From Lytechinus pictus (Eukaryota): 64,000 nt of DNA. The stretch covers positions 9,734,001 through 9,798,000 of the forward strand of contig NC_087263.1 in the NCBI RefSeq assembly GCF_037042905.1, given 5' to 3'. The position numbers and the translations under genes are program-made. Position 1 is the stretch's first letter. The number at the start of each line of letters is the position of its first letter. The notes beneath the pieces are model-generated. The model worked only from the letters and a program-made list of their open reading frames with translations. It searched no databases and was not told the DNA's origin. Shown here in pieces: positions 37,901-60,478 of the stretch.

Positions 37901-40900
37901 ATGACGGATTTTTCTAGGTTTCCATTTAGCTCTTTAAATAACGATGACTTGTTGTCTCTCTCAGCGCAACATGGCGTTACCCGCACACTAGATAATCATG
38001 ATAACTCCAACTATAATGCACACATACAGAATTTCATGGACAATAATACATCAGATCTTAATTACAACTTGGATGCAAATGATCACTTCGGACAGCTCAC
38101 TACATCACATTATTTCACAGAACAACATTTCAAATCATACATTACATCAGATAACACTGGCGAAAGTTTTTTTTTCTTCTCCATTTTAATTTCAGAAGTG
38201 CCAGTAAAAACTTTGATAAACTTAAACTATTTCTAGATAAAAACCGGTTTCCGAAATCTTCATTTATTGGTTTAACCGAAACATGGTTCTCTGATAATCC
38301 ATGTTCCCTCTTCACACTCCCTGATTTCGATTTGATTGTTAACAATAGAACGCTAAGACCTGGTGGTGTTGTCGCTCTTTACATACCGCAACAATACGAC
38401 CACACTCTTATAGCTAACATGACCATATCAAACGACGTTCTAGAAACCTTATTTGTTGAAGTCACAAACCCCAGAGGCAAAAACTTAGTACTTGGTGTTT
38501 TTTATAGACCCCCTCAATCTAATGTTAATACTTTTTTAGAATCTCTTAATGAAATTTTATCAAATCCTGTTTTGAAAAATAAAGATAGCTTTTTTATGGG
38601 TGACTTTAATATTAACTTAGTAGATTGTAATTCAAATAGCACCTCACATGAGTTTCTTGAAATGTCTCTTTCATATTCTTTTTTACCGCTTATCACTAAA
38701 CCCACAAGAGTGACAGATAACTCGGCCACTTTAATTGATAATATTTTTAGTAATATAACTCAACAAATTCCCAAAGCCGGTATTATCCTAAGTGACATTA
38801 CTGATCACTTTCCAATTTTTGCTAAATTATCTACAAATAAAATTATCATGAAAGAAACATTCAATACTCCATTTCGAAAGATAACCGATGACAACATAAA
38901 CAATCTGATTAATACTTTAAATACAACAGACTGGTCAACTGTTTTTGAATCCACAGATGTTGATGACGCTTATAACTTTTTCATTTCCAAATTAACCTCT
39001 TCTCTAGATACCCACGTTCCTTTTACCACTAACAGAAAATCAAATTATAAAAAGGTTCCACTCCACCCTTTGATTACTAAATCACTTTTGAGATCAATCA
39101 ACCGAAAGAACAACCTTTACTATAAATACATAACTAAACAAAGTAACGAATCTCGCTCTAAATATACTTCATACAAAAACACACTTACTACTTTATTACG
39201 CATTGCAAAAAGAGAATATTATACCTCCCAACTCAATTTGTTAAAAAACGATATGAGGAACACATGGAAAATCATTAATGGAGCATTAAATAAAAACAAA
39301 AAAAGTACTCCTATAACAAAAATAGAAGTAAACAATACAATTACTGACGAAAACATATCAATAGCACAATAATTTAATTCATATTTTTCAAACATTGGCA
39401 ACAATCTGGCAAGCAAAGTTCCTCAAACTCCTAAATCTTTCAACAGTTTTCTTGACAACCCAAATCCAAACTCTATATTTTTTAATCCTACTAACACAAT
39501 AGAAATTATTAATATTGTTAATAATCTACATACCAAGAAGAGCCCAGGTTTCGATGGTATTCCTAACTTCTTACTTAAGAAAATTATTTTAACTATCGTC
39601 GATCCTCTGGTCCACATATTTAATGTTTCTATGAACACAGGAAAGGTACCTAACCTAATAAAAATAGCCAAAGTCATCCCCCTTTACAAAAAAGGTGATA
39701 ATCAACTTGCTTCTAATTACCGTCCTATTTCATTGCTCACTTCGTTATCTAAAATTCTCGAAAAACTTATACATACTCGTACAACTACCTTCTTTAATAA
39801 ATACAATACTTTTTCGAATTCGCAATTTGGTTTCCGCGAAAATCATAGCACCTCGCATGCAATTTTGACTTTTATCAATAAAATTACTTCTTCCATAGAT
39901 AAAGGTTGTCATACTGTTGGTATTTTCCTGGACTTCTCCAAGACCTTCGATACCATTAACCACGAAATACTTCTTCATAAACTTTCTTTTTATGGTATCA
40001 GGGGAAAGGCCTTGGAGTGGTTCAAGAGCTACCTAACAGACAGATCTCAATTTGTGTCAGTCAACAACATTGTTTCTTCTACTCTTCTTATTACATGTGG
40101 TGTACCACATGGTAGTTTACTTGGTCCTCTTACTTTATTACATATATTAATGACATCCAAAAAAGTTCTAATTTACTAACATTTGCATTGTTTGCTGACG
40201 ATTCGAACATTTTCTTTTCTCATGATAACGTAAACCAACTTGTAAGAATTGTAAACTCAGAATTTATACATGTCACTGACTGGATTAAGGCGAACAAACT
40301 ATCACTTAACTTACAAAAGACAAATTTTATGCTTTTTAGTAACAGAATAAATACAATACCTGATAACATAATTTTTGATAATACTGTTCTTGAAAATGTT
40401 TCAGACACCAGATTTTTGGGGGTTACTATTGATAATAAGCTATCATGGAAACCACACATCAATAATATATGCAAAACAATTTCAAGAAACATCGGAATTA
40501 TCAACAAACTCAAATATTTTCTCCCATCTCACACTTTACTTACACTGTATCATACATTAATACTACCATACATTAATTATGGCATTTTGGCATGGGGCTG
40601 TGCGATCCAAGCACAATTACAAAGAATACTGTTGCTGCAGATGAAGGCTCTTAGAATAATTTTTCAAACCCAATTTAGATCACACACAGATATACTATTC
40701 TTCCAAAATAATATTCTTAAAGTGAGCGATTTATATATTTTCCAACTCGCCCAATTTATGTATAAACTAAACAAAGATGATCTCCCAACATTTTTTTCAA
40801 ATATGTTCTGTAAAAACTCCTCTATACACGATTACCCAACGAGACAACGTAACTGTTATCACCTACCCCCTACCCGTACTATATTAGCGAAAAACTCTTT

Positions 40901-41039
40901 TATATTTTTTGGACCTGTGTATTGGAATTCTCTGCCCGACGACTTTAAAGAATCTACAAACCTTAATATTTTTAAACGCAAACTTAAAAAGATGCTCATT
41001 TGTCAATACTCCACACCAACAAGTCAAGCTAACACATAA
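37901..41039 (+). pseudogene. L2/Crack ORF2 (APE + RT) with a few frameshifts and stops
   Basis: ETWFS, FYRPP, MGDFNINL, TDHFP, FLDFSKTFDTINH and FADDSN motifs; ends FKRKLKKML. Confidence 0.92.
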
Positions 41040-45420: not shown

Positions 45421-45965
45421 CTTTTTTATTAAAATTCTTTACATCTATCTTGTAAAGCGATGTGGCAGAACCTGGCTATTATGTATAGAGATAAAATGCT
45501 TATAAAAGGCGTTCTTAAACAGTTGGAATGAAATTTCTTCACGGTCGCTACGTTTCCTAGCATTACATCTGAAATTATTTTATAATCGGGTTGAGGTTAG
45601 AAACATTCTTACCCATCTGCCTAGTGAATAGTTTCCAATCCCCATGCTGTCATTTTCCTTCTTCGTATGTGGCCAACGTCACATATTTTTCAAACCACCC
45701 GAAACCCCAAACCTTCTCGAAACATTGCATAAACATTTGCATCTGATTTGAATGATATTTCAACAATTCAGCTTACATGATTCTATCACTACTGATTTGA
45801 ACAATTTCTAGCCCTTTAAAATTATCAGGGGGTAATTCAATTCAAATACCACAATTCAAATTATGATTAATGTAGTGATGATTACAAGTATTGTTTTCTT
45901 ACTCTTTTCCTTACAGATGAAAAGGAAACAATGGGGAATTTATAAAAACCCATTAGAACACAACT

Positions 45966-48068
45966 ATGCAACCAATATTAGGAGTTGGGAATACTGGGCA
46001 AAGTGGCAGGAACGCGTACACCCCTAATGGAGGAGATACTCTTTCGTGTAACCTCCCTACATCACAACGACCTGATGCAGATGTAGACGACATGATGTCG
46101 ACACTGTCTCAGGGCAGCGATAACGCTCCAATATCTCCAAAGGCCAACGATGGGAACACCATCTCTAAGGAAGAATGCATCATTGAGAATCAGGTTGCCC
46201 TTCCAAGCGTTACTTTGCAGCATAGCGATGACTCAAAACGCGGGTCTACAGAACAGAGCGAATCTCTTCTTTCGGTCTCACCAGAACGATCGCTCAACCC
46301 TGACATAGACCAGGCAGATGAGGAAGGATGCAATTCGCTCTACAAAGCGGCTTCGAGAGGTCACATCGATGGGGTTGAAATCCTCGTTGAAAAAGGAGCA
46401 GACCCAAATAAAGCAAATAAAGACGGACGCAGGGCTCTCCATGTAGCTGCTGAAGAAGGACATGGAGCTATCGTAAATTTCCTCTTGGATCAGGGAGCAG
46501 ACATAAATGCCCAATGTGATCTGGGTCAGACGGCTCTCCATGCTGCAATACACAAAAATCAATGCTACTCTTCATTAATTCTTATTAGGAGCGGAGCAGA
46601 TGTTCACAGACGAGATAATGATGGAAGAAACCCTTTACACATGGCAGCAGCAGCTGGGTACACCCACATCTTTCAAAACCTCAGAGATGAAACATGTGAC
46701 ATAAATGTGAAAGATGACATGGGTCTAACAGTTCTTCATCATGCAGTGATAAATGGACATTCCAATGTTGTCCATCATCTTCTCAAGACAGGGGTTAAGG
46801 AGAGACCTTATGAAGGAGATAGTCTAAGCTTTGCGTTAACATCGTTTGGCAAGTTAGATTTGCTCCAACTTTTTATTTCCAGAGGCGGTAGTGTGAACAA
46901 GGAAAACAGCATCGGACAGAATCATCTCCACGTAGCAGCTTTGAATGGATACTTTGACATTACTAGATGTCTCGTTCAAGAAGGATGTGACATGAATAAG
47001 GAGGATTGTAAAAATTTCACACCAGTCCACGGGGCAGTGTTAAACGGACATTTGGATGTACTTCATTATCTCATAACACAGGGAGCCAAGATCACCATGT
47101 ATGATGGAAAGAGTGTTCTGCACTTGGCAGCTATCTATGGTCACCTCGACATACTCCAATACTTCATGAAGATGGGAGCTGATGCCAATGAGCTCGACGA
47201 CATTGGACAAACTCCTCTTCATGTGGCAGCAGGTGTGGGTCACTTTGACGTCGTGAAATATCTCACTAAACAAGGATCAAAGACTGACAAACAAGATCAC
47301 CTTGGTTACACTCCTCTCCACATTGCAGCCGCAAAAGGTCAACCTGAAATCGTCAAATATCTTGCAGATCAAAACTGCTACGTGGAACATTTCGATATCG
47401 AAGGTTTGACACCTTTAACTCTAGCAGCTAAACATGACCATTTAGATACTGTCAAGTGTCGTGCGGATGGAAAAGCTGATGAAGCGAACTCACTCTGTGA
47501 AGCAACATTATCTGGTCATTTGGATATTGTCAAGTTTTTAATGGAGGAAGTCGGTCGTCTAAAAAACAGAGTCGAGTCGCTAGAAGCTGCAGCTGATGAG
47601 GCGGAGCAGTATTCACGCCGCAATTGCCTGATTTTCAGTGGTATTGCTGAATCTGCAAACGAAGATACTGATGCCAAGATCATAGAGGTGTGCCAGAGGA
47701 ATCTGGGTGTTACAGTGAAACAAGAGGACATCGATCGTTCCCACCGCCTCTCCAGCCATGCTGCGCTTGAGAACAAGCTGAAGGATCCACGTAAGCCCCG
47801 GAATATCATCATCAAATTTTCCAACTACAGGGCAAGAGAGGCTGTATACGCATCTAGGGCTAAGCTGAAAGGCCTTTCAATTTACATCAATGAAAATCTA
47901 ACACGGAAGCGATCTCAGCTGTTCTGGCAAGTGAAGAAGGGAAACCTCCCGCAAGTCCACAAAGTCTGGACTCAAGACAGAAGAGTAATAGCGATGAATA
48001 AGAGTGGGAAAAGAGTTGCTATTTCAAGTGTAAAGGACCTCGGAAAACTTGATCAATTGAAGGAATGA
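45966..48068 (+). CDS. 700-aa ORF: disordered N-terminus, ~12 ankyrin repeats, fused in frame to LINE ORF1p (coiled coil-RRM-CTD)
   Basis: Repeated TPLHxAAxxGHxxxVxxL motifs to ~47540, then EQYSRRNCLIFSGIAES...DIDRSHRL...PRNIIIKF...IYINENLT. Splice acceptor ttttccttacag ends at 45916. Confidence 0.85.
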   Translation: MQPILGVGNTGQSGRNAYTPNGGDTLSCNLPTSQRPDADVDDMMSTLSQGSDNAPISPKANDGNTISKEECIIENQVALPSVTLQHSDDSKRGSTEQSESLLSVSPERSLNPDIDQADEEGCNSLYKAASRGHIDGVEILVEKGADPNKANKDGRRALHVAAEEGHGAIVNFLLDQGADINAQCDLGQTALHAAIHKNQCYSSLILIRSGADVHRRDNDGRNPLHMAAAAGYTHIFQNLRDETCDINVKDDMGLTVLHHAVINGHSNVVHHLLKTGVKERPYEGDSLSFALTSFGKLDLLQLFISRGGSVNKENSIGQNHLHVAALNGYFDITRCLVQEGCDMNKEDCKNFTPVHGAVLNGHLDVLHYLITQGAKITMYDGKSVLHLAAIYGHLDILQYFMKMGADANELDDIGQTPLHVAAGVGHFDVVKYLTKQGSKTDKQDHLGYTPLHIAAAKGQPEIVKYLADQNCYVEHFDIEGLTPLTLAAKHDHLDTVKCRADGKADEANSLCEATLSGHLDIVKFLMEEVGRLKNRVESLEAAADEAEQYSRRNCLIFSGIAESANEDTDAKIIEVCQRNLGVTVKQEDIDRSHRLSSHAALENKLKDPRKPRNIIIKFSNYRAREAVYASRAKLKGLSIYINENLTRKRSQLFWQVKKGNLPQVHKVWTQDRRVIAMNKSGKRVAISSVKDLGKLDQLKE

Positions 48069-51000
48069 GACAACAATATCAATCAAATTCACTGAACTGT
48101 AATACTTGGTCTGCTTGAGCACACAGGCGTTCCTGTTTACTATTTGCTTTTAAATTGCACTATTAAATATACGATTTGTTTTTAATAACGTTAATCACTA
48201 GAACTTGGTTCTTATTTTATTGAATATTTGTATAAAATTACATTCATTACTTACACGTAATACTTTTCACTTGTTTTAACCTATTTTCAACATAAGATTT
48301 AATGATTAAATACCCATGTTCAATTTGTAATAAATCTGTTAAAATAAATCAAAAGGCTTTGTTATGCACTGTATGTTCACAGTGGGTGCATATAGTTTGT
48401 GGCGGGGTCTCAAGAGAGACCTATGATTCAGATGAACTGTTTGAAAATTGGCAGTGCCCGAAATGTATTCTCCAAAGTGTATTACCTTTTTGGAATGATC
48501 CTGATCTATCTACTGAAGGCATGTATAACTAATAATATTTCTGTCGACGCACATGATGATAGGTCAACCGAAACTAATGATTTTGCTCTAAAAGATATTA
48601 AAGGTATAAAATTAGCTCATCTTAATGTCAGAAGCATTGTTAATAAAGTTGCTGATTTACAATGTTGGCTGAATAATAACCCTTATGATCTACTAGGAGT
48701 GTCAGAAACATGGTTAACAAAAGAACATTCTGATAGCTTGATTTCTGTTAAAGGTTATAAGTTTGAGAGGAAGGATAGATGTACTCATGGAGGTGGAGTG
48801 AGATGTTTTATATCAGAAAATCTATCGTATATAAGGAGATTGGATCTTGAATATGTTGCCTTAGAAAAAAATTTGGTTGGAGTTGCAACGTAGCAATAGT
48901 AGCTCATTATTAATTGGTATATTGTATAGAAAACCGGATAATCATTTAGATTTTTTTTACAGTCTTGAAAGTAATCTTGAGAAATTGTATAGAGTTACAA
49001 ACAACGTCATCCTTCTTGGTGATTTTAACTGTAATATGCAAACCGTAAATAATCTTTCTAGAAAAGTTTCCAGTCTCCTTACTACAGTGCAAATGACACA
49101 GGTTATATCTGCACCCACTAGAATTTCACCACATAGCCAGTCAGTAATCGATTTGGTATGTATTTCTGATGCGCTTGTTGACAATATTATTAAGTCAGGA
49201 GTGCAGTAAGCTGGACTTAGTGATCACTCTGTGATTTTTACTGCAATTAAAGGGAAACATCAATCCCTTTCTCCGAAAATAACTAAATGTCGTTCATTCA
49301 AGTACTTTGACAGTGAGAAATTTAAAGATGATGTAAGGAAAGTTGATTGGCATGAGTTTTATTCCTGTGGGACTGACGTTGAAAAATTGTGGCACTACTT
49401 TAAAGGACAAGTCCACCCCATCAAAAACTTGATTTGAATAAAAAGAGAAAAACTCAACAAGCAAAATACTGAAAATTTTATCAAAATCGGGTGTAAAATA
49501 AGAAAGTTATGGCATTTTAAAGTTTCGCTTCATTTCACAAAACAGTGATATGCACATCTCGGTCGGTATGCAAATGAGGAACTGATGACATCACTCACTC
49601 ACTATTTCTTTTGTATTTTATTATATGAAATATGAAATATTTTTATTTTCTCGTCATTGTCATGTGAAATGAAGTTTCATTCCTCCCTGAACATGTGGAA
49701 TTCCATTATTTCAACATTTTGTGCTTCAGGCAAGGAGGTCCTAATTGTCAAATTCGTAAAAATTGAAATATTGTATAATTCAAACAATAAAAAACAAAAG
49801 AAATAGTGAGTGAGTGACATCATCGACTCTCTCATTTGGATGTAACTGGCTCATTCATATAACTATTTTGTTAAAAATAAGCGAAACTTTGAAATGTCAT
49901 AACTTCCTTATTTTACATCCGATTTAGATGAAATTTTCAGCATTGTGCTTGTCTGATTTTTCTCGATTGATTCAAATCAACATTTTTCTGAGGTGGACTT
50001 GACCTTTAAAAACACACTCCTGGACATTTGTGACAGGCATGCCCCCGTGATATCAGTGCGGCAAAAACAAAGAGGGGTACCTTGGATAAATGATGATTTT
50101 TTGGTGTTACCACGCGAAAGGGATTATTATCGAAAGCAATTTAGAAAAACAAGATTAATTTATTGGTGGAATAAATTTCAGTTTTCCCGTAACAGAGCTA
50201 ATAACTTGATTAAAAATTTGAAAAAGAAGTATTATCAGGACAAATTTAAGGACTGCGAAAATGACATAAAAAAGAACTGGAACATTTTATCGAAGTTTAT
50301 ACCTAAGAAAAATAAAACCACGAGTCATGATGTTAAATTAACAATTGATAATGATCAAATACCTAACAATGAAATAGCTCACGTTCTAAACAAAGCCTTT
50401 AATGAAGTCGGAGAGCAATACATGATAAATTGTATAAGTACTTAAATGTAAATGATCTACTTGCAAATTGTCAGTCTGGCTTCAGACCGTCTTATTCTAC
50501 TGCCACTTGTCTAACTGAGATTACAGATTTTTTGTATTATAAATTGGACTGAAAACATGTTACTGGTTGTATTTTTTTGGACTTACGCAAAGCTTTTGAT
50601 GTTATTCCTCACAATTTTATACTTGCAAAACTTAAGTACTATGGTATTACTGGCAATGAATACAACTGCATGGAATCGTATTTAACAGACAGAAGGCAAT
50701 TTGTAATGATTAACAGTTGTCGCAGTGAATTTTTGAAGATAAAATCAGGTGTCCCACAAGGATCTATACTGGGTCCACTGATATTTTGTATTTTTATTAA
50801 TGACATGTGTAATTTGAAATTGCATGTACATTATAAAATGTCTCTTTACGCTGATGATACCGCCATTTTTTAATCACGGTGAATCAATTAAGGAGGTACA
50901 AAAGTATCTGCAAGATGATTTTGATTCAATAAGTAAATGGCTAGACTTAAATAATATGCATTTACACCCGCAAAAAACAAAAGCCATGGTATTTGGTCAA

Positions 51001-51940
51001 AAGAAAAAGTTGAGGGGTGCTCATTTGTCAGTGAAATTCAGGAACGTACAATTAGAAAATGTAAAAAAGATTAAATACTTAGGTGTCATGCTCGATACGG
51101 GCTTGACTTGGTGCGAACATATTACTAATATCGTTTGTAAAATATATCGGGCAATAGGTTGTGTAAGGCGGATTAAGCACTTAATGTCCTTTGATATCAT
51201 GAAGAAGCTGTACTTTTCTATGATTTTACCTTACATTGATTACTGTATTACATCTTGGGGAAGCAGTGCAAAAATACATTTAGATAAGACACAAAAACTT
51301 CAAAATAAATATGCCAGAATGCTTTTGAAAAAAAGATTATAATACATCACAAATTTCTTTGTTGCAGTCACTGAAGTGGCAATCAGTAGATCAGCGTATA
51401 AAATATAAGTATTGTGTACTTGTATATAAAATAATGAATGATTTAGTTCCAAATTATTTAAAACCTTTAGTATGTAAACGGCCCGTGAAATACAGGACAC
51501 GGTTTTCTTTACGATGCCCGCTTCAGCTTCCCAAAGCTAGAATTGAACATAAAAGAAAATCTTTCGCATATGTCGGACCCAAATTTTTTAATGTACTTCC
51601 TTCAAATTTACAAGTTTGTACCTCCTTGTTAGTTTTTAAAAAAATATGCAAAGCCTTTCATATGAATTGATATAGAGCGAAATGATATTCTATTGATTTA
51701 CAATGCTATGTATGTTAAAATTGTCACTTCCCACTCTATATTTTGGTGTTAATTGTTTCTGATGTTAGATATTTTGTATTTTGTATTTTTGATGTTGTTT
51801 GTTGTTGTTGTAGTTGTTCATAGTTATCTTGACATGTATTTTAAACTGCAGGGCGCCTTTGTAAAGCATTTTTAAAAACTGAACAGGCCTACCCTGCAGT
51901 ATAATATAAATAAAACAAAAATTAATAAATAAATATAAAT
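47541..51940 (+). mobile_element. 5'-truncated CR1/L2-group LINE inserted in the ankyrin exon; ORF2 with N-terminal PHD finger, APE and RT (disrupted)
   Basis: CSIC...CTVC..WVHIVC...WQCPKC PHD; HLNVRS, VSETWL, LGDFN, DLRKAFD, GVPQGSILGP and YADDT motifs; AATAAA-rich tail at 51901-51940. No TSD seen. Confidence 0.9.
49404..50005. mobile_element. TTAA-targeting (Kolobok-like) MITE inside LINE ORF2
   Basis: TTAA|AGGACAAGTCCACC...GGTGGACTTGACCT|TTAA; removal restores LWHYFKNTLLDICDRHAP. Confidence 0.92.
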
Positions 51941-53036
51941 CGCTTTGAACTTCGTCTTGCAGCTTCTAATGGGAACTTAGATACCGTGAAGTATCTCGTG
52001 CAACAAGGAGTTGATATAAACAGCAACGATGAGAAAGGCTGGACATCGTTGGAGTGTGCAATCCAGAATAACAATTGTGAGGTCATAGACTATCTGCTTA
52101 CGAATGGAGCTAAAGCGAACCAAGGAAATGAAGAGAGTCCACTCTACATGGCATCTAGACTTGGCCACTTCGATGCAGTAAACGTTCTTATTTCAAGAGG
52201 GATTTCGGTAAATGCTGAGAGTCACAGAGGACAGATTCCTCTTCACGCTGCTGCTACCACCGGCAGAATTCAAGTCGTTGAAACCCTCATTCAAAGGGGA
52301 TCAGATTTGAACAAGACTGACATCGACGGTTGCACACCACTTCACGCAGCGGTCCAAAAACGGCCACCTCGAAGTCGTTAGGTATCTCATATGGAAAGGA
52401 GCGATCGACATCAAATATAGAGGAATGACCTCTCTACATTGCAGCTCAAATTGGTCACCTATATACATAGTCGATCTCCTCCTTTCTAATGGCGCTGATG
52501 TAAATGAGGAAAATGACACTGGGTGTATTCCTCTTCATGCTGCAGCAGCCAATGGTTCACTTGAGATAGTCCAAAAGCTCATCAATCAAGAATCAGACGT
52601 GAACAAGATGGCCGACAATGGATGGACTCCATTACACGCTGCAGTCCAGAGTGGCAGGTTAGATGTCGTACGTAATATGATTTCCCATGGAGCTACAAAA
52701 ACGAGGTTCGAAGGAATGACTGTTCTCTACATTGCTGCCCAGCGTGGTCACATAGACTTAATCGAGTACTTTGGCACCACAGGCTGTGATGTAAATGACG
52801 GAACAGATAGCGGCAAAACTCCTCTTTTGGCTGCCTGTTATAATGGTGCATTAGATTCTGTGGAGATGCTGGTCACCCAGGATGCCTGTATTAATCATGC
52901 TGACAGAAACAAAAGGACACCAGTCCATGCAGCGGCAAAAGAAGGACACTTGCCTGTCGTTACCTACCTGGTAGAAAATGGAGCAGACACAAATGCTAAA
53001 GATACAGATGGAATAACTCCACTTCAAGCAGCATAA
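51941..53036 (+). pseudogene. Continuation of the ankyrin-repeat exon (~11 more repeats), disabled
   Basis: Ankyrin motifs continue; +1 frameshift in the A-run at ~52356-52360 and TAA at 53034-53036. Confidence 0.88.
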
Positions 53037-56000
53037 GATGGAGACAATGAAGATGTCAAACAATGTCTCCTCCGGTTAACAGCAAAAGCGCAAGATGAAC
53101 GGCATAACGATATTAAGAAGACAGATGGAATGACACCCCTTCAAGCAGCAGAAGATGCAGGTCTTCAAGATGTCCAACAATGTCTCATTCAGTTCAGAGG
53201 AGGAGTGCAAGATGAACGGCATAAAGGTACAGAGAAGACAGATGGAATGACACCACTTCAAGCCGCAGAAGATACAGGTCATTAAGATGTCCAAAAATGT
53301 CTCATTTAGTTCAGAGGAGGAGTGCAAGATGAACGGCATAATGGTACAGAGAAGACAGATTGAATGACACCACTTCAAGCCGCAGAAGATGCAGGTTATC
53401 AAGATGTCCAGCAATGTCTCATTCAGTTCAGAGGAGGAGTGCAAGATGAACGGCATAAAGGTACAGAGAAGACAGATTGAATGACATCACTTCAAGCCGC
53501 AGAAGATGCAGGTCATCAAGATGTCCAAAGATGTCTCATTCATTTCAGAGGAGGAGTGCAAGATGAACGGCATAAAGGTACAGAGAAGACAGATGGAATG
53601 ACACCACTTCAAGCCACAGAAGATACATGTCATCAAGATGTCCAAAAATGTCTCATTCAGTTCAGAGGAGGAGTGCAAGATGAACGGCATAATGATACAG
53701 AGAAGACAGATGGAATGACATCACTTCAAGCCGCAGAAGATACAGGTCATCAAGATGTCCAAAAATGTCTCATTCAGTTCAGATCAAAAGTGCAAGATGA
53801 AGAGCATAAAGGTACAGAGAAGACAGATGGAATGACATCACTTCAAGCCGCAAAAGATACAGGTCATCAAGATGTCAAAAAATGTCTCATTCAGTTCAGA
53901 GGAGGAGTGCAAGATGAACGGCATAATGGTACAGAGAAGACAGATGGAATGACATCACTTCAAGCCGCAGAAGATGCAGGTCATCAAGATGTCCAACAAT
54001 GTCTCATTCAGTTCAGAGGAGGAGTGCAAAATGAAGGGCATAAATGTACAGAGAAGACAGATGGAATGACACCACTTCAAGCCGCAGAAGATACAGGTCA
54101 TCAAGATGTCCAAAAATGTCTCATTCAGTTCAGAGGAGGAGTGCAAGATGAACGGCATCATGGTACAGAGAAGACAGATGGAATGACATCACTTTAAGCC
54201 GCAGAAGATACAGGTCATCAAGATGTCCAAAAATGTCTCATTCATTTCAGAGGAGGAGTGCAAGAAGAACGGCATAAAGGTACAGAGAAGACAGTTGAAA
54301 TGACATCACTTCAATCAGGAGAAGGTGCAGGTCATCAAAATGTCCAAAAATGTCTCATTCAGTTCAGATCAAAAGTGCAAGATGAAGAGCATAAAGGTAC
54401 AGGGAAGACGGATGGAATGACATCACTTCAAGCCGCAGAAGATACAGGTCATCAAGATGTCCAAAAATATCTCATTCAGTTCAGAGGAGGAGTGCAAGAT
54501 GAACGGCATAATGGTACAGAGAAGACAGATGGAATGACATCACTTCAAGCCGCAGAAGATGCAGGTCATCAAGATGTCCAGCAATGTCTCATTCAGTTCA
54601 GAGGAGGAGTGCAAAATGAAGGGCATAAATGTACAGAGAAGACAGATGGAATGACACCACTTCAAGCCGCAGAAGATACAGGTCATCAAGATGTCCAAAA
54701 ATATCTCATACATTTCAGAGGAGGAGTGCAAGAAGAACGGCATAAAGGTACAGAGAAGACGGATGGAATGACATCACTTCAAGCCGCAGAAGATACAGGT
54801 CATCAAGATGTCCAAAAATGTCTCATTCAGTTCAGAGGAGGAGTGCAAGATGAACGGCATAAATGTACAGAGAAGACAGATGGAATGACACCACTTCAAG
54901 CCGCAGAAGATACAGGTCATCAAGATGTCAAAAAATGTCTCATTCAGTTTAGAGGAGGAGTGCAAGATGAACGGCATAAAGGTACAGAGAAGACAGATGA
55001 AATGACATCACTTCAAGCAGGAGAAGGTGCAGGTCATCAAGATCTCCAACAATTTCTCTTTCAGTTCAGAGGAGGAGTGCAAGAAGAACGGCATAAAGGT
55101 ACAAAGACAGATGAAATGACATCACTTCAAGCCGCAGAAGATGCAGGTCATCAAGATGTCCAACAATGTCTCATTCAGTTCAGAGGAGGAGTGCAAGATG
55201 AAGAGCATAAAGGTACAGAGAAGACGGATGGAATGACATCACTTCAAGCCGCAGAAGATACAGGTCATCAAGATGTCCAAAAATGTCTCATTCAGTTCAG
55301 AGGAGGAGTGCAAGATGAACGGCATAATGGTACAGAGAAGACAGATGGAATGACATCACTTCAAGCCGCAGAAGATGCAGGTCATCAAGATGTCCAGCAA
55401 TGTCTCATTCAGTTCAGAGGAGGAGTGCAAAATGAAGGGCATAAATGTACAGAGAAGACAGATGGAATGACACCACTTCAAGCCGCAGAAGATACAGGTC
55501 ATCAAGATGTCAAAAAATGTCTCATTCAGTTCAGAGGAGGAGTGCAAGATGAACGGCATAAAGGTACAGAGAAGACAGATGAAATGACATCACTTCAAGC
55601 AGGAGAAGGTGCAGGTCATCAAGATCTCCAACAATTTCTCTTTCAGTTCAGAGGAGGAGTGCAAGAAGAACGGCATAAAGGTACAAAGACAGATGAAATG
55701 ACATCACTTCAAGCAGGAGAAGATGCAGGTCATAAAGATCTCCAACAATTTATCTTGCAGTTCAGAGGAGGAGTGCAAGATGAACGGCATAAATATGCTA
55801 AGAAGACAGATCGAATGACATCACTTCAAGCCGCAGACGATGCAGGTCATGATGATGTCCAAAAATGTCTCATTCATTTCAGAGGAGGAGTGCAAGATGA
55901 ACGGCATAAAGGTACAGAGAAGACAGATGGAATGACATCACTTCAAGCAGCAGAAGATACAGGTCATCAAGATGTCCAAAAATGTCTCATTCAGTTCATT

Positions 56001-56460
56001 ACAGAGAAGACAGATGGAATGACATCACTTAAAGCCGCAGAAGATGCAGGTCATCAAGATGTCCAAAAATGTCTCATTCAGTTCAGAGGAGGAGCGCAAG
56101 ATGAACGGCATAAAGGTACAGATAAGACAGGTTGAATGACGTCACTTCAAGCAGCAGAAGATACAGGTCATCAAGATGTCCAAAAATGTCCCATTCAGTT
56201 CAGTGCAAGATGAAAGGCATAAAGGTACAGAGAAGACAGATGGAATTACACCACTTCAAGCCGCAGAAGTTGCAGGTCATCAAGATGCCCAAAAATGTCT
56301 CTTTCAGTTGAGAGGAGTGCAAGATGAACGGCATAAAGATACTAAGAAGACAGATGGAATGACACCTCTTCAAGCAGCAGGAGATGCAGGTCATGAAGAT
56401 GTCCAACAATGTCTCATTCAGTTAAGAACAGAAGTGCACGATGGACGGTATGATGATACA
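53005..56460 (+). repeat. Coding-type tandem array, ~30 x 117 bp (39-aa ankyrin-derived unit)
   Basis: Unit TDGMTPLQAAEDTGHQDVQKCLIQFRGGVQDERHKGTEK; several units contain stops. Confidence 0.95.
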
Positions 56461-57133
56461 GATGACAGCTTTAGATCTGACGGAAACTGCCCAGAGATGG
56501 TCCGAGGTTCTGGGATGTCCAAAGTGTCCGCTTATGATAGATTGTCTGGTATTAACGGAGAGTCCGACTACCCAATGCCCTTAAATGTCACGACGGCTTC
56601 TATTCCTATGTAAGTAAGTATACTTAACGCTTGCTTAAAATGATCTTCACACCCTACAAGAATACCGTAACAGAATAAAAAGCAAGGCATTAGAAATATA
56701 AAATCATTGTAATCTCAAAGTGTTGATTACATTTAGTCTCTTTTAGTGATAAAACTAAATGTAAATACATTTTCCGAATATAAATGCAGCATTCTTAAAT
56801 CATATTCGAACAAGCAGCCAAGTCACACTACATCAAGTCCTCAACTACTTACATCTGGTCCGGTTCCTAACCCATAATGCAGTATTATGAGCAGTGTAAA
56901 CTTGTAATATGTAACCACGTGAATGATAAATTCGCTACTCAATACTCTATACAGCAAAAACTATTCAACCTGCAAAAAATTTAGTACCTTTCATTTCAAC
57001 AAAATGTTCCATCTTCGCAATCTAGTTACTTAGACAATTTTATTAGATTAAATCCATTAGTCCTAGTTTTTAAAAGACAACTACAAAATATCATACTTGA
57101 ACATGACATGTCATGTTTATGTTTCACCCACAG

Positions 57134-57198
57134 AATCCCTGGCGAACGAACCCTGATAGCCTTTCCCGACATATCAAGACAACTATTCGGCCTCCTCG
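57134..57198 (+). CDS. Linker exon 1a (65 bp, NPWRTNPDSLSRHIKTTIRPP)
   Basis: tttcacccacag acceptor, GTAAGA donor, phase 0 to 2; paralogue at 57953-58017. Confidence 0.75.
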
Positions 57199-57533
57199 GT
57201 AAGAGCCAGTACTTTGAGGCTTTTTGTGTTGAGACATAAATATACCACCTTACATTATCTTACATATAGAAGTTGAAATTGAATGAATTCATATACAAGC
57301 AAGAAAATAAAATGTTTGATAAAAGGGGATCACCAAAATAGCAATAGCTGCTAATAGTGTGACGCACCCTGTACATAATAATATGTAGCTCTTCCAAATA
57401 AACAGATACATACTTATTACCTAATGTATTCCCAATGAGTACATTCAATATACTGACAAATAATTATATTAGTACATTCACGAAAATCACCCTAATTTGC
57501 ATATAACCTATGCTATTTCGTACTATGTTTCAG

Positions 57534-57648
57534 TGAGTCATGTATCGCCAAACCAAAAACACAACTCCATGGAGGTGAGGTACCAGCTACTGATGATTTT
57601 GCTATCAACATAGAAAACGGCGCAGGAGATCCAAAATCCGTAATAAAG
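57534..57648 (+). CDS. Linker exon 2a (115 bp, ESCIAKPKTQLHGGEVPATDDF...)
   Basis: atgtttcag acceptor, AAG|GTAGCC donor, phase 2 to 0; open in the frame set by exon 1a. Confidence 0.75.
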
Positions 57649-57952
57649 GTAGCCTTTTATACGATTACCGGGAATAGGGCAGCCACAAAGATCTCCGTGT
57701 TGTATAAATCGTTATGATCCATTGTAATTAAGGAATTAAGGGCATGTCCTAATATATTATAGTTTCACTATACAAATGAAGTAATGACACTCTTGGCTCC
57801 TCCGCTAGGATCTATTATCCATGTTTTCGTGTAATCTAATGTCATTTAATTAAATATAACTTTAACAGATTTAATAATTCGTTAGGCCTATTTTTAAAAG
57901 ACAGCTACGCAATACCATTCTTGAACATGATATTCTTACGTTTCACCCACAG

Positions 57953-58017
57953 AATCCCCGGCGAACGAACCGTGATAGCCTTTCCCGACAAATCAAGACA
58001 GCTATTCGTCCTACAAG
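57953..58017 (+). CDS. Linker exon 1b (65 bp)
   Basis: Duplicate of exon 1a with intact splice sites and open frame. Confidence 0.75.
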
Positions 58018-58397
58018 GTAAGAGCCTGTGGGTTGAGGCCTTTTGTGTTTAAGACATAAATAAACCACCTTACATTATCTTACCTGATGAAGTAGAAATA
58101 GAAACTTTATTACCGAAAATATTGTTGTACAAGCAAGAAAATAAAATATTTGATAAAAGGGGATCACAAAATAACAATACCTGCTAATAGGATGTGGCAC
58201 CTTGTATATGATAATGTAAAATAAACAGATATACACCTAAATGAATTACTTAAGGGGTACATTCAATATACTGACAACTAATTCATAACAGTGCATTTAG
58301 GAATGTCTTCGTCAAACGTGTTTTTAAGACATTCACCTCAGAAATGAAATTCACCCCAATTTGTATTTAACCTATTCTATTTCGTATTATGTTTTAG

Positions 58398-58521
58398 TGA
58401 GTCATGTGTCGCCAAACCAAAAACACAACTTCATGGCGGTGATGTACCAGCTACGGATGATTTCCCTGTTATCCGCATGACCGATGAAAACGACGCAGTA
58501 GATCCAAAACCGGAAATAAAG
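58398..58521 (+). CDS. Linker exon 2b (124 bp)
   Basis: Duplicate of exon 2a with a frame-preserving 9-bp length difference; AAG|GTAACC donor, phase 0. Confidence 0.75.
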
Positions 58522-58743
58522 GTAACCTTTTATAGGATTACCTGAAATAGGACAGCCACGCAGATCACTGTGTTGCATAAATTGTTGTCATCAAATGAAA
58601 TTAGGAAAGCAAGGCCATCCCCTAAAACATTTCTAAAGTACGCCCCTGACTTTTTAAAACCCAAGATGCATTTTATTGCCAATTTTATGCAATACTCTAC
58701 CATACATGTAGCTTTGTTGGTTTATTGTTAAGTTTAGTTCTGA

Positions 58744-59280
58744 TTAAATGAGAATCCAACCCAAACAAAAGCTTGTTTTTAAAGAGAAATGAAAAATGAG
58801 ACAAGTTGATATGTGAAAGTTTGAACAATATCGGACAAACAATAAAAAAGTTATCATTTTACCAATGAAGACTTCAAATTGGCCGCATATGTGATGTCAT
58901 AGCGATGTAAGGCAAGGACTACTCTTCCATGTACTCCAATACAGAAATATTTCTGAGATAACATTTTATCCGAAGTTTGTACTTCATATTATATTTTCTT
59001 TCATGAGGATATAAAATGATATACTACCTGGGTTATATTTAGATTACTGCCCCTGGGGAATGGGTACTACAGCGAAAACCATAAATACCTGATAATTAAG
59101 GTAGGAAAGTTGTCCTTGCTCAGTGCCAAAATTTATTTACCCAGTTACCAATTTGGAATATACACCGTATCCGTATATCAATTTTGCCCGATTTCTTTCA
59201 AACTTCCAGCATTCTGTTTTATTTATTTTTCTTCTTCCCAACACAGCATTTTATGACCAAGGCTGGATTCTGATGTTCAT
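58744..59280. mobile_element. Degenerate Kolobok-like MITE in the last intron
   Basis: TTAAATGAGAATCCAACC...GGCTGGATTCT imperfect TIR; interior motifs resemble the other TTAA MITEs. Confidence 0.5.
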
Positions 59281-59539
59281 GTTGCATTTATTTATTGCAA
59301 ATTTATCAGTGACATGGAACAATGAAATTCGTTTACTCTCTTGTTTGACTTATGTTCAGATCCCTCGATCCTTTGCAACATGTCATCAATTAGATATCGT
59401 TTGATTAACAAAGTAACATATCGTAATACAAGATGACGACATGTGAAAAAAAAAAATAAATGAACCTCCGATCCAAGTTCACCACATGGCATGAATAATT
59501 CCTATTGTTACTTTTGACCATTGTATACTCTTCTTGCAG

Positions 59540-60478
59540 AGCGAACGACGGAACATTGAGAATGGCCATTCGATCCCGACCCTCCTCTGTTGGCATTATT
59601 GGGCGATTCTCGCTTTGGCCTTCTTCTCTGCTTGTCCAATACTTGTAGCAGGCAACTCAAGGTGGACCGAACCGGTTACGTTGGATGTGGGTACTCGTGG
59701 CGTAGTCACATTCCATCTTCAGCGACCATCCAGTACACTACAGTTTTCTCTTTTCTACACGATTCAGTTCGGATCAAAGGGTCGTCCTTTCTGCATAGAT
59801 GGACAATATGATGTTGATGGCTTCAAAAATCCTCAAATATCAAGATTCACTACCACTGTCATAGACATAGGTACATCTCCCTGTGTGAATATGACAATAG
59901 ATGACGTTGATACCATAGACGGAGATCAGTACATACTCACGGCTGTGTGGCGTAATTTGGAGAACGTTCTGTATGATACTCAAAAGAAGGAGGTAGTTGT
60001 ACAGCGTCCTCCCGGTCCGGCAGATTGCTTCATCACTTTGATTGATAGTGAGTATCCGTATGAAGTACATTGTTGGGCCAAGACTGGACGTATGCCAACC
60101 AAACTGACGTGCTTCCAGAACGACCGAGAGCTCGTCAAAGTGCAGATCAGTACAGGTAAGAGGCACACCACCACAGCTATCTTCCTCCTACCCCATACGA
60201 CACATTTCTCCTGCTGTTCAAATGCCAAAACATCTACCGTAGATGCTGCAACCTGCAACGACTTTGAGTGGCCCTCTGGTTATTCTGGTATTTCTAGTAC
60301 AGAGGCTACCAGTAGGAGCATGCTTGCCGATGAACAATATGATTGGCCTACTGATCCGACAACTAATACCGATACAATAGGGTCTGGAGCTTGTAGACCA
60401 TTCATGATTCCATCACAATGGCACTTTCTGTACCTGCTCATTTATCTTCTTGTCTTTGTTAAAACTATAATTTGTTAG
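59540..60478 (+). CDS. Terminal exon: hydrophobic helix, V-like and C2-like Ig domains, Ser/Thr stalk, C-terminal hydrophobic (GPI-like) tail
   Basis: ctcttcttgcag acceptor in phase 0; WAILALAFFSACPILVAG; SRF...VNMTIDDV..IDGDQY; HCWAKTGRMPTKLTC...FSCC; GSGA...WHFLYLLIYLLVFV. Intact frame. Confidence 0.8.
   Translation, partial: SERRNIENGHSIPTLLCWHYWAILALAFFSACPILVAGNSRWTEPVTLDVGTRGVVTFHLQRPSSTLQFSLFYTIQFGSKGRPFCIDGQYDVDGFKNPQISRFTTTVIDIGTSPCVNMTIDDVDTIDGDQYILTAVWRNLENVLYDTQKKEVVVQRPPGPADCFITLIDSEYPYEVHCWAKTGRMPTKLTCFQNDRELVKVQISTGKRHTTTAIFLLPHTTHFSCCSNAKTSTVDAATCNDFEWPSGYSGISSTEATSRSMLADEQYDWPTDPTTNTDTIGSGACRPFMIPSQWHFLYLLIYLLVFVKTIIC

What the first reader, a model, noticed from the sequence alone, without database searches (positions are those of the whole stretch)
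45966..48068. LINE ORF1p captured in frame by an ankyrin gene: unbroken 700-aa chimera amid decaying neighbours
Seen: the frame runs without a stop from host ankyrin repeats (GHLDIVKFLM) into a truncated LINE ORF1 (EEVGRLKNRVESLE...SRRNCLIFSGI) and ends at the ORF1 stop. The same LINE's ORF2 has at least six frameshifts or stops plus a MITE, and the downstream ankyrin and tandem sequence has several more, yet these 2.1 kb have none. Known: ORF1p of this type is a trimeric RNA-binding protein, and mammalian L1TD1 is a domesticated ORF1p. Inference: a nascent ankyrin-scaffold/RNA-binding fusion, possibly able to co-assemble with LINE RNPs, that can use the LINE's poly(A) signal. An in-frame landing occurs by chance one time in three, so selection is not proven.
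Basis: partly seen in the sequence, partly recalled or inferred. Interest (0 to 1): 0.8.

Follow-up and report, generated by a model that had tools for sequence, protein, structure and literature searches.

The report
LINE insertion truncating a sea-urchin ankyrin gene
A young LINE retrotransposon landed in frame inside the big coding exon of a sea-urchin ankyrin-repeat gene, giving a real, annotated 700-residue ankyrin–ORF1p hybrid reading frame, but the LINE-derived tail shows no sign of selection.

Summary
Window 45966-48068 (+) is one 700-codon ORF. Residues 1-526 are host sequence, a unique N-terminus plus about 12 ankyrin repeats. Residues 527-700 are the C-terminal 55% of a LINE ORF1.

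Three paralogs on the same chromosome are contiguous across the site, so window 47543 abuts 51938 in them. This is therefore a precise, sense-oriented, 5'-truncated LINE insertion into a continuous coding exon.

The tail folds with high confidence as helix + RRM + CTD, and its best structural matches are the human LINE-1 ORF1p trimer.

The rest of the LINE is broken: five frameshifting indels (one a 367-bp deletion) and a 611-bp MITE in ORF2, plus a 137-bp deletion in the ORF1-ORF2 spacer. The downstream host exon is broken too, by one frameshift and at least seven in-frame stops.

The same 700-aa chimera, 693/700 identical, is a RefSeq model for Lytechinus pictus (ANKRD50-like). RNA-like contigs carrying this copy's private alleles cover the locus at low depth.

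The insertion is young, with about 1.1-1.3% private divergence. The tail has 4 nonsynonymous and 2 synonymous private changes. One replaces a glycine found in all 36 aligned homologs. Most of the coiled coil is lost.

Openness of the tail alone is unremarkable (P 0.2-0.35). Openness of the ankyrin part is mildly unexpected (P 0.01-0.13).

Verdict: an accidental chimera with a passenger tail. No case for domestication is made.

The parts
45917..45965 (+). Start of the large host exon: putative splice acceptor (...ccttacag|) followed by a short leader with an in-frame TAG at 45954
   Evidence: Sequence read. The acceptor is inferred from the polypyrimidine tract plus AG, and was not checked with RNA.
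45966..47543 (+). Host part of the chimeric ORF (aa 1-526): about 120 aa of unique N-terminus plus about 12 ankyrin repeats
   Evidence: Paralogs align at 74-80% identity up to 47543. The last 2 nt (TG) are microhomology shared with the LINE.
47544..48068 (+). LINE ORF1 remnant (aa 527-700 plus stop): the last ~24 residues of the coiled-coil helix, the RRM and the CTD
   Evidence: 96-98% identical to about 30 genomic copies. AF2 pLDDT is 92 and the best structural match is the human L1 ORF1p trimer. It has 6 private substitutions and no private indel.
48069..49399 (+). LINE inter-ORF spacer, PHD finger (48314-48478) and the APE-domain part of ORF2. Broken by a 137-bp deletion (48277), a 2-bp deletion (48529) and a 1-bp insertion (48865)
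49400..50009 (.). 611-bp foldback MITE inserted into the LINE ORF2
   Evidence: More than 6,900 first-look candidates in the genome, and each copy matches on both strands. Very high contig depth in all runs.
50010..51937 (+). Remainder of LINE ORF2 (RT) and the 3' UTR with an A/T-rich tail. Broken by a 367-bp deletion (50410) and 1-bp insertions (50866, 51328, 51917)
51938..53003 (+). Continuation of the host ankyrin exon, now cut off from the ORF. Has a 1-bp insertion (extra A in an A-run) at about 52357
   Evidence: Paralogs are contiguous across 47543|51938. tblastn shows the frame change.
53004..56632 (+). 117-bp (39-aa) tandem array of about 29 units plus the C-terminal end of the old exon. 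Has 7 or more in-frame stops, and the frame is lost near 56170

Best explanation
A sense-oriented, 5'-truncated LINE inserted recently into the large coding exon of one member of a local family of ANKRD50-like ankyrin genes. The host is a sea urchin, Lytechinus pictus or a very close relative. The LINE is L2/CR1-like: an L1-type ORF1, then a PHD finger at the start of an APE-RT ORF2.

The 5' junction uses 2 bp of microhomology. No target duplication or deletion is recognisable.

The truncation point fell inside ORF1 and happened to be in phase with the host frame. Translation of the host exon therefore runs through 526 host residues into 174 residues of ORF1p and ends at the ORF1 stop. The old protein had about 1,000 residues or more; the downstream ankyrin repeats and the 39-aa repeat array are now excluded and have decayed, as has the LINE ORF2.

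The product, if made, is a truncated ankyrin protein with a passenger RRM-CTD tail. The tail is drifting neutrally. Whether the ankyrin part is still constrained is unresolved.

Shown: the anatomy, the insertion, the youth of the insertion, the decay of the flanks, a second open allele, and the fold of the tail. Inferred: transcription (from contig depth ratios), the chance nature of the in-frame landing, and neutrality of the tail.
For: - Paralogs at about 9.92, 9.96 and 10.03 Mb on the same contig are contiguous across the site. Two of them have intact open frames of 981 and 1123 aa.
- LINE homology begins at 47542 and ends at about 51935-51940.
- Private divergence is 6/527 in the ORF1 tail and 42/3201 in the rest of the LINE, plus 8 private length changes. 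The two large deletion junctions are unique in the genome.
- The tail has 4 N: 2 S private changes. Gly is replaced by Arg at a position where 36 of 36 homologs have Gly.
- P(open | neutral) for the tail alone is 0.21-0.35.
- Only about 24 residues of helix precede the RRM, whereas full copies have a 319-aa ORF1.
- The exact protein is in NCBI/UniRef. A 99% identical 700-aa L. pictus RefSeq model shares the same private tail residues.
- In run X2, the depth of the LINE 5' part is about the same as the depth of the unique ankyrin part. In the DNA-like run X1 the LINE 5' part is 4- to 23-fold deeper. X2 contigs carry this copy's private alleles at 47741-47779 and 48278-48800.
Against: - Zero disruptions in the 1.58-kb ankyrin part is mildly unexpected if it were fully neutral since insertion (P 0.01-0.13). 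Some constraint on the chimeric ORF as a whole cannot be excluded.
- Two haplotypes keep it open.
- With only 6 private substitutions in the tail, a dN/dS test has almost no power.
- Some of the LINE's defects could date from retrotransposition or from the source copy. That would inflate the neutral rate used.
Confidence: 0.78

Rival explanations
1. Nascent functional fusion. The ankyrin scaffold plus ORF1p RRM-CTD is maintained by selection as a new RNA-binding protein, and it possibly interacts with LINE RNPs.
For: - The ORF is open over 2.1 kb while the flanks carry about 2 disruptions per kb.
- It is open in two haplotypes.
- The tail still models as a well-folded L1-ORF1p-like RRM+CTD with pLDDT 92.
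- There is low-level RNA-like coverage.
- Host-ORF1p fusions are known elsewhere: Lyosin (PMC12129022) and L1TD1 (PMC4161310, listed).
Against: - The tail has 4 N: 2 S private changes, including an invariant Gly replaced by Arg.
- Most of the coiled coil needed for ORF1p trimerisation is missing.
- The tail's openness is expected by chance.
- The insertion's private divergence (about 1.1-1.3%) is well below the 4-10% divergence of organism-B contigs over the ankyrin part, so there is no cross-species conservation to lean on.
- No other protein with this architecture was found.
Confidence: 0.08
2. The LINE is removed from the transcript as an intron, and the full-length host ankyrin protein is still made. 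On this reading the chimeric ORF is only a genomic reading artefact.
For: A polypyrimidine tract plus AG lies just after the LINE 3' end, at 51950-51962. Another note of this scan (s1-306787) models a spliced gene across 45917-60478.
Against: - The downstream exon has a frameshift and at least 7 in-frame stops, so no full-length product is possible.
- The one plausible donor I checked by eye (GT at 47550) would join out of frame.
- No joint 47543->51938 appeared among the joints listed. Most joints were not shown.
- X2 contigs carrying this copy's private alleles extend into the LINE to at least 48800.
Confidence: 0.03
3. Assembly artefact: a LINE copy was mis-joined into the ankyrin exon, or the flanking frameshifts are sequencing errors.
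For: Several flank defects are 1-bp changes in homopolymer runs (48865, 51328, 52357). Short-read contigs could not confirm them.
Against: - An independent RefSeq model from another haplotype or assembly has the same junction and the same stop.
- X1 contig record 3 runs 46720-47571 with 0 differences.
- An X2 contig reaches 47550.
- An X2 contig covers 48278-48800 with 0 gaps, which confirms the 2-bp deletion and starts at the 137-bp deletion edge.
- Stops made by substitution, the large deletions and the MITE are not homopolymer errors.
Confidence: 0.02

Closest known systems
Lyosin (MYL4-L1 ORF1p fusion isoform of sauropsids; Kitao et al. 2025, PMC12129022)
   Same: A host protein joined in frame to an L1-type ORF1p module (RRM/CTD) derived from a LINE insertion.
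   Different: Per the paper's abstract, Lyosin is an alternatively spliced exon. It is ancient (pre-Sauropsida), under purifying selection, and expressed in testis. Here the LINE sits inside a coding exon and truncates the host protein. It is species-young and its tail shows no constraint.
L1TD1 (mammalian gene domesticated from L1 ORF1; McLaughlin et al. 2014, PMC4161310)
   Same: A host-encoded protein with ORF1p-derived RNA-binding domains.
   Different: L1TD1 is an old, stand-alone gene conserved across mammals. This description rests on title/abstract lines and on general knowledge. The present case is a recent exon insertion in a single species, with the decayed ORF2 still attached.
Ordinary gene disruption or exon truncation by a 5'-truncated LINE insertion
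   Same: Sense insertion in a coding exon, a microhomology 5' junction, premature termination inside the element, and decay of the cut-off downstream exon.
   Different: The truncation point fell inside ORF1 and in phase. The premature stop is therefore the ORF1 stop, and a complete RRM+CTD fold is appended instead of a few junk residues.
L2/CR1-lineage LINEs with type II (Tnp22) ORF1 and a PHD finger at the start of ORF2 (type IIB, 'L2 subgroup 5', Metcalfe & Casane 2014, PMC4120745)
   Same: An L1-ORF1p-like ORF1, then a stop, then a PHD finger leading into APE-RT (paper text).
   Different: Clade membership by RT phylogeny was not tested here. Pfam PF02994 itself does not hit this ORF1.

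Membership tests
L1-type (type II) LINE ORF1p: coiled coil + RRM + CTD | RRM fold followed by a CTD, structurally like human L1 ORF1p | tested here: met
   AF2 model with pLDDT 92 and pTM 0.81. Foldseek ranks 1-10 are human L1 ORF1p entries (2YKO/2YKP/2YKQ, 2LDY) at E 3e-8 to 4e-5, TM 0.5-0.62 over about 185-190 columns.
L1-type (type II) LINE ORF1p: coiled coil + RRM + CTD | Long N-terminal coiled coil that mediates trimerisation | tested here: not met
   The chimera keeps only a helix of about 24 residues before the RRM. Full copies and a 74%-identical relative have about 140 further N-terminal residues. The feature is present in the family but lost in this copy.
L1-type (type II) LINE ORF1p: coiled coil + RRM + CTD | Sequence match to Pfam Transposase_22 (PF02994) | tested here: not met
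   No hit even at E<=5. There is only a sub-threshold Baculo_FP_2nd match at E 1e-3.
L1-type (type II) LINE ORF1p: coiled coil + RRM + CTD | RNA binding and trimer formation | not testable with these tools
   Needs biochemistry.
Domesticated ORF1p-derived host protein (L1TD1 / Lyosin kind) | ORF1-derived sequence is part of a host coding transcript | tested here: inconclusive
   The chimera is annotated as a 700-aa protein in two assemblies. RNA-like contigs with locus-private alleles lie on both sides of the junction. None bridges it by 31 nt or more on both sides.
Domesticated ORF1p-derived host protein (L1TD1 / Lyosin kind) | Conserved as an ortholog across species | tested here: not met
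   Only the window's own protein and its L. pictus cluster mate carry the tail. Private divergence of the insertion is 1.1-1.3%, against 4-10% for organism-B contigs over the ankyrin part. The empty site in the sister species was not seen directly.
Domesticated ORF1p-derived host protein (L1TD1 / Lyosin kind) | Purifying selection on the ORF1-derived part | tested here: not met
   4 N: 2 S private substitutions, and Gly replaced by Arg where 36 of 36 homologs have Gly. Power is low.
L2/CR1-lineage LINE, ORF1 type IIB (Tnp22 ORF1, PHD at ORF2 start) | Domain order: Tnp22-like ORF1, stop, PHD, APE, RT | tested here: met
   (PHD E 1e-8; Exo_endo_phos_2; RVT_1). The architecture is described in PMC4120745.
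L2/CR1-lineage LINE, ORF1 type IIB (Tnp22 ORF1, PHD at ORF2 start) | RT/APE phylogeny places it in the L2 clade | not tested
Ankyrin-repeat protein (annotated ANKRD50-like) | Tandem 33-residue ankyrin repeats | tested here: met
   Pfam Ank_2 E 1e-77 and Ank E 1e-66 over aa 120-525. Orthology to vertebrate ANKRD50 was not tested; the name is the source's.

The most novel reading that the evidence does not exclude
The chimera is a very young functional gene. On this reading a soluble ankyrin scaffold has gained an L1-type RRM-CTD RNA-binding module and is kept open by selection. It would bind RNA, possibly RNA or RNPs of the still-abundant parent LINE family. That would make it an invertebrate, exon-insertion counterpart of L1TD1 and Lyosin, caught near its birth.
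Probability: 0.07. Interest if true: 0.7.

Novelty: new member of a known kind. Interest (0 to 1): 0.3.

Why it matters
If the fusion were functional, it would be a rare snapshot of ORF1p domestication at birth. It would sit in an experimentally tractable sea urchin: L. pictus has knockout lines (PMC9245184, listed).

As the evidence stands, it mainly matters for annotation. A RefSeq "ANKRD50-like" protein is in fact a LINE-truncated paralog with a transposon-derived C-terminus. It is also a clean example of how in-phase 5'-truncated LINE insertions create chimeric ORFs. Such ORFs can look like new genes.

Tried and rejected
1. [quoted passage not shown]. I rejected this. The copy I used as reference (L003) is itself 5'-truncated, and other copies carry about 319-aa ORF1 frames.

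2. Splicing out of the LINE from GT at 47550 to AG at 51962. By my reading of the sequence this join is out of frame. The downstream exon is broken in any case.

The analysis used the +/-1.5 kb loci already held. About 56 bp (50010-50065) of the LINE had no comparison copies.

4. The search for an ortholog in the sister species by protein returned only generic ankyrin hits.

5. The search for junction-spanning partial proteins in public assemblies returned none. An exact look-up of the RefSeq allele's contig also returned nothing.

6. Read laying listed no contig bridging the junction by 31 nt or more on both sides, and no empty-site joint. Most joints and loose ends were swamped by the MITE and not shown, so absence proves nothing.

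7. Long-term pairwise dN/dS against paralog A gave omega 0.73 for the upstream part and 0.31 for the first downstream segment. This says the N-terminal ankyrin region evolves fast in this family. It cannot isolate the time since insertion.

8. No target-site duplication could be identified.
Full report
**Observation.** Window 45966..48068 (+) is a single 700-codon ORF. Pfam finds strong ankyrin-repeat matches over about residues 120-525 (Ank_2 E 1e-77). In the last 175 residues it finds only a sub-threshold Baculo_FP_2nd match.

The exon seems to start at a splice acceptor at 45916. An in-frame TAG lies at 45954, so the ATG at 45966 is the first usable start.

The C-terminal 527 nt are 96-98% identical to about 30 other places in the 812-Mb genome. 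Homology to those copies begins at 47542.

**It is an insertion into a continuous exon.** Three paralogs lie on the same contig, at about 9.92 Mb (+), 9.96 Mb (-) and 10.03 Mb (-). They match the sequence upstream of the LINE up to window 47543. They then continue directly with the sequence that follows the LINE from 51938. The short alignment shows ...TTCATG|AATCGC... in the paralogs, against ...TTAATG|[LINE]|AATCGC... in the window.

The ancestral frame therefore read ...GHLDIVKFLM-NRFELRLAASNGNLD.... The 5' junction has 2 bp of microhomology (TG). No target-site duplication or deletion is recognisable.

Paralogs A and C have uninterrupted open frames of 1123 and 981 aa, and B is broken. The ancestral product was thus much longer than the 526 host residues that remain.

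**The element.**
- The 3' end lies at about 51935-51940 and has more than 600 candidate matches.
- Mid-ORF2 has about 170 candidates and the ORF1 region about 30. This is the usual 5'-truncation gradient of a LINE.
- ORF2 pieces carry Exo_endo_phos_2 and RVT_1.
- A PHD finger (E 1e-8) sits just after the ORF1 stop, at 48314-48478.
- This order, a Tnp22-like ORF1 and then a PHD at the start of ORF2, is the one Metcalfe & Casane describe for their L2 subgroup 5 (PMC4120745). I did not test clade membership by RT phylogeny.
- Full copies have ORF1 frames of about 319 aa, and a 74%-identical relative has 311 aa. The window copy keeps only the C-terminal 174-175 residues.

An earlier inference of mine, that the family's ORF1 lacks a start codon, was an artefact. 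The reference copy I had chosen is itself truncated.

**Fold of the tail.** I modelled the tail with an alignment of 37 homologs. AlphaFold2 gives pLDDT 92 and pTM 0.81. The model has a 24-residue helix, a beta-alpha-beta RRM-like domain and a C-terminal alpha/beta domain.

Foldseek against the PDB puts the human LINE-1 ORF1p trimer first (2YKO/2YKP/2YKQ; E 3e-8 to 7e-6; TM 0.5-0.62 over about 185-190 columns). The isolated RRM-CTD and RRM structures follow.

However, most of the coiled coil that trimerises L1 ORF1p is missing from the chimera.

**Age and decay.** I compared the window copy column by column with 16 other copies for 47542-49399, and with 4-11 copies for 50066-51940. I counted only states that no other copy shares.

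| Region | Length | Private substitutions | Private length changes |
|---|---|---|---|
| ORF1 tail | 527 bp | 6 (1.1%) | none |
| Rest of the LINE | 3201 bp | 42 (1.3%) | 8 |

The eight length changes are:
- a 137-bp deletion at 48277
- a 2-bp deletion at 48529
- a 1-bp insertion at 48865
- the 611-bp foldback MITE at 49400-50009
- a 367-bp deletion at 50410
- 1-bp insertions at 50866, 51328 and 51917

The two large deletion junctions occur nowhere else in the genome.

Downstream of the LINE, the host exon has an extra A in an A-run at about 52357, relative to all three paralogs. A 117-bp (39-aa) tandem array of about 29 units follows. It carries in-frame stops at 53034, 53283, 53307, 53361, 53478, 54195 and 56133, and the frame is lost near 56170.

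**Is the open frame more than chance?** I used 1.1-1.3% divergence and the ORF's own P(stop | substitution) of 0.033-0.042. Indel rates came from the same LINE copy. As an alternative I used the disruption density of the downstream exon.

| Segment | P(stays open) |
|---|---|
| Whole ORF | 0.002-0.07 |
| Ankyrin part | 0.01-0.13 |
| ORF1 tail alone | 0.21-0.35 |

Two caveats apply:
- Some LINE defects may date from retrotransposition or from the source copy.
- AT-rich LINE sequence with homopolymer runs probably gains 1-bp indels faster than the 45%-GC ankyrin exon does.

The tail's intactness therefore carries no information. The ankyrin part's intactness is a mild hint of residual constraint.

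**Selection on the tail.** Of the six private substitutions, two are synonymous (47741, 47750) and four are nonsynonymous (47779, 47979, 47989, 48021). That is about the neutral ratio.

The change at 47979 puts Arg where all 36 aligned homologs, down to 29% identity, have Gly (chimera residue 672). In the model this position lies between two strands of the C-terminal domain. This is what drift looks like, not maintenance of the module.

Over the long term, the N-terminal ankyrin region of this family also evolves fast. Omega is about 0.73 against paralog A, compared with 0.31 for the first downstream segment.

**Other alleles and expression.** The exact 700-aa sequence is in NCBI/UniRef. Its 90% cluster holds one other member, XP_054774551.1, [quoted passage not shown]. 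That protein is also 700 aa and is 693/700 identical. It has the same junction, the same stop and the same private tail residues.

The host is therefore this sea urchin or a very close relative. A second haplotype or assembly keeps the ORF open, and the insertion predates the split of the two alleles.

Laying four public runs on 46150-52149 gave the following.

- **X1** (organism A) behaves like DNA of the source sample. Unique depth is about 4, the LINE 5' part is at 15-93, and the contigs are identical to the window. One contig covers 46720-47571 and reaches 28 nt past the junction.
- **X2** (organism A, another sample) behaves like RNA.
  - The LINE 5' part (2-9) is no deeper than the unique ankyrin part (1-16).
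  - It holds contigs with this copy's private alleles at 46462-46667, at 47741-47779 and at 48278-48800.
  - The 48278-48800 contig has 0 gaps, which confirms the 2-bp deletion.
  - One contig ends at 47550, 7 nt past the junction.
- **X3** (organism B, RNA-like) covers the ankyrin part with 90-96% identical contigs at high depth. A related gene is therefore well expressed in the sister species.

No listed contig bridges the junction by 31 nt or more on both sides, and contigs cannot show strand or 3' ends. Transcription through the junction is therefore likely but not proven. Use of a LINE poly(A) signal is untested.

The insertion's 1.1-1.3% private divergence is well below the 4-10% divergence of organism-B contigs. 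This implies that the insertion arose after the species split. The empty site was not seen directly.

**Comparison with known cases.**
- Host-ORF1p fusions exist. Lyosin is a MYL4-L1 ORF1p fusion that is ancient, spliced and under purifying selection (PMC12129022). L1TD1 is another example (PMC4161310).
- The present case shares the architecture idea but fails the tests that define domestication. It is not conserved across species, and its ORF1-derived part shows no purifying selection.
- Searches found no other protein with this ankyrin + ORF1 tail.
- Another note of this scan reports a different ORF1p chimera elsewhere in the genome (s1-311576). I did not check it.

**Verdict.**
- The best reading is an accidental in-phase LINE insertion that truncated one paralog of an ankyrin gene family. 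It appended a passenger RRM-CTD tail.
- The chimeric ORF is annotated and probably transcribed at low level.
- The tail is drifting.
- A selected fusion remains possible at roughly 7-8%.

Noticed in passing
window 53004-56470: A 117-bp (39-aa) tandem array of about 29 units with consensus like TDGMTPLQAAEDTGHQDVQKCLIQFRGGVQDERHKGTEK. Paralog A has about 2 units and paralog C about 6, so the array expanded strongly in this copy. Two adjacent units share the same GGA-to-TGA stop, which suggests the stop was copied along with the unit.
   Followed up: partly
window 49400-50009: A 611-bp foldback MITE. Each genomic copy matches the query on both strands (about 97% and about 74%). There are more than 6,900 first-look candidates, and contig depths are 10^4-10^6 in all runs.
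   Followed up: partly
G000:C19 about 9.917-9.922 Mb, 9.960-9.965 Mb and 10.031-10.037 Mb (L044/L056/L057, L048/L055, L049/L050/L054): A local cluster of paralogous ankyrin genes. A and C have intact 1123- and 981-aa open frames, and B is broken. Paralog C has a 95%-identical 3' fragment of the same LINE family just upstream.
   Followed up: partly
window 50528-50576: Six private substitutions within 49 bp of the LINE ORF2, all to T (from C, G, A, C, G, C). This is an unusual cluster for point mutation and is unexplained.
   Followed up: no
window 47098: The window (and the RefSeq allele) has T (Met378). Run X2 of the same organism and both organism-B runs have A (Lys). So this is a derived, polymorphic nonsynonymous change in the ankyrin part.
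   Followed up: partly
chimera residues 410-413 (window about 47193-47204): Three of the 7 amino-acid differences between the two alleles fall within four residues (LDDI against IDGS). This could be a multi-nucleotide event or gene conversion between repeats.
   Followed up: no
window 38332-41039 (+) and 10653-11384 (+): Further LINE ORF2 remnants (Exo_endo_phos_2 / RVT_1) from other insertions in the window.
   Followed up: no
window 59534-60478 (+): A 314-aa ORF with no Pfam match. Another note of the scan (s1-306787) treats it as a later exon of the same host gene, but I did not test this.
   Followed up: no
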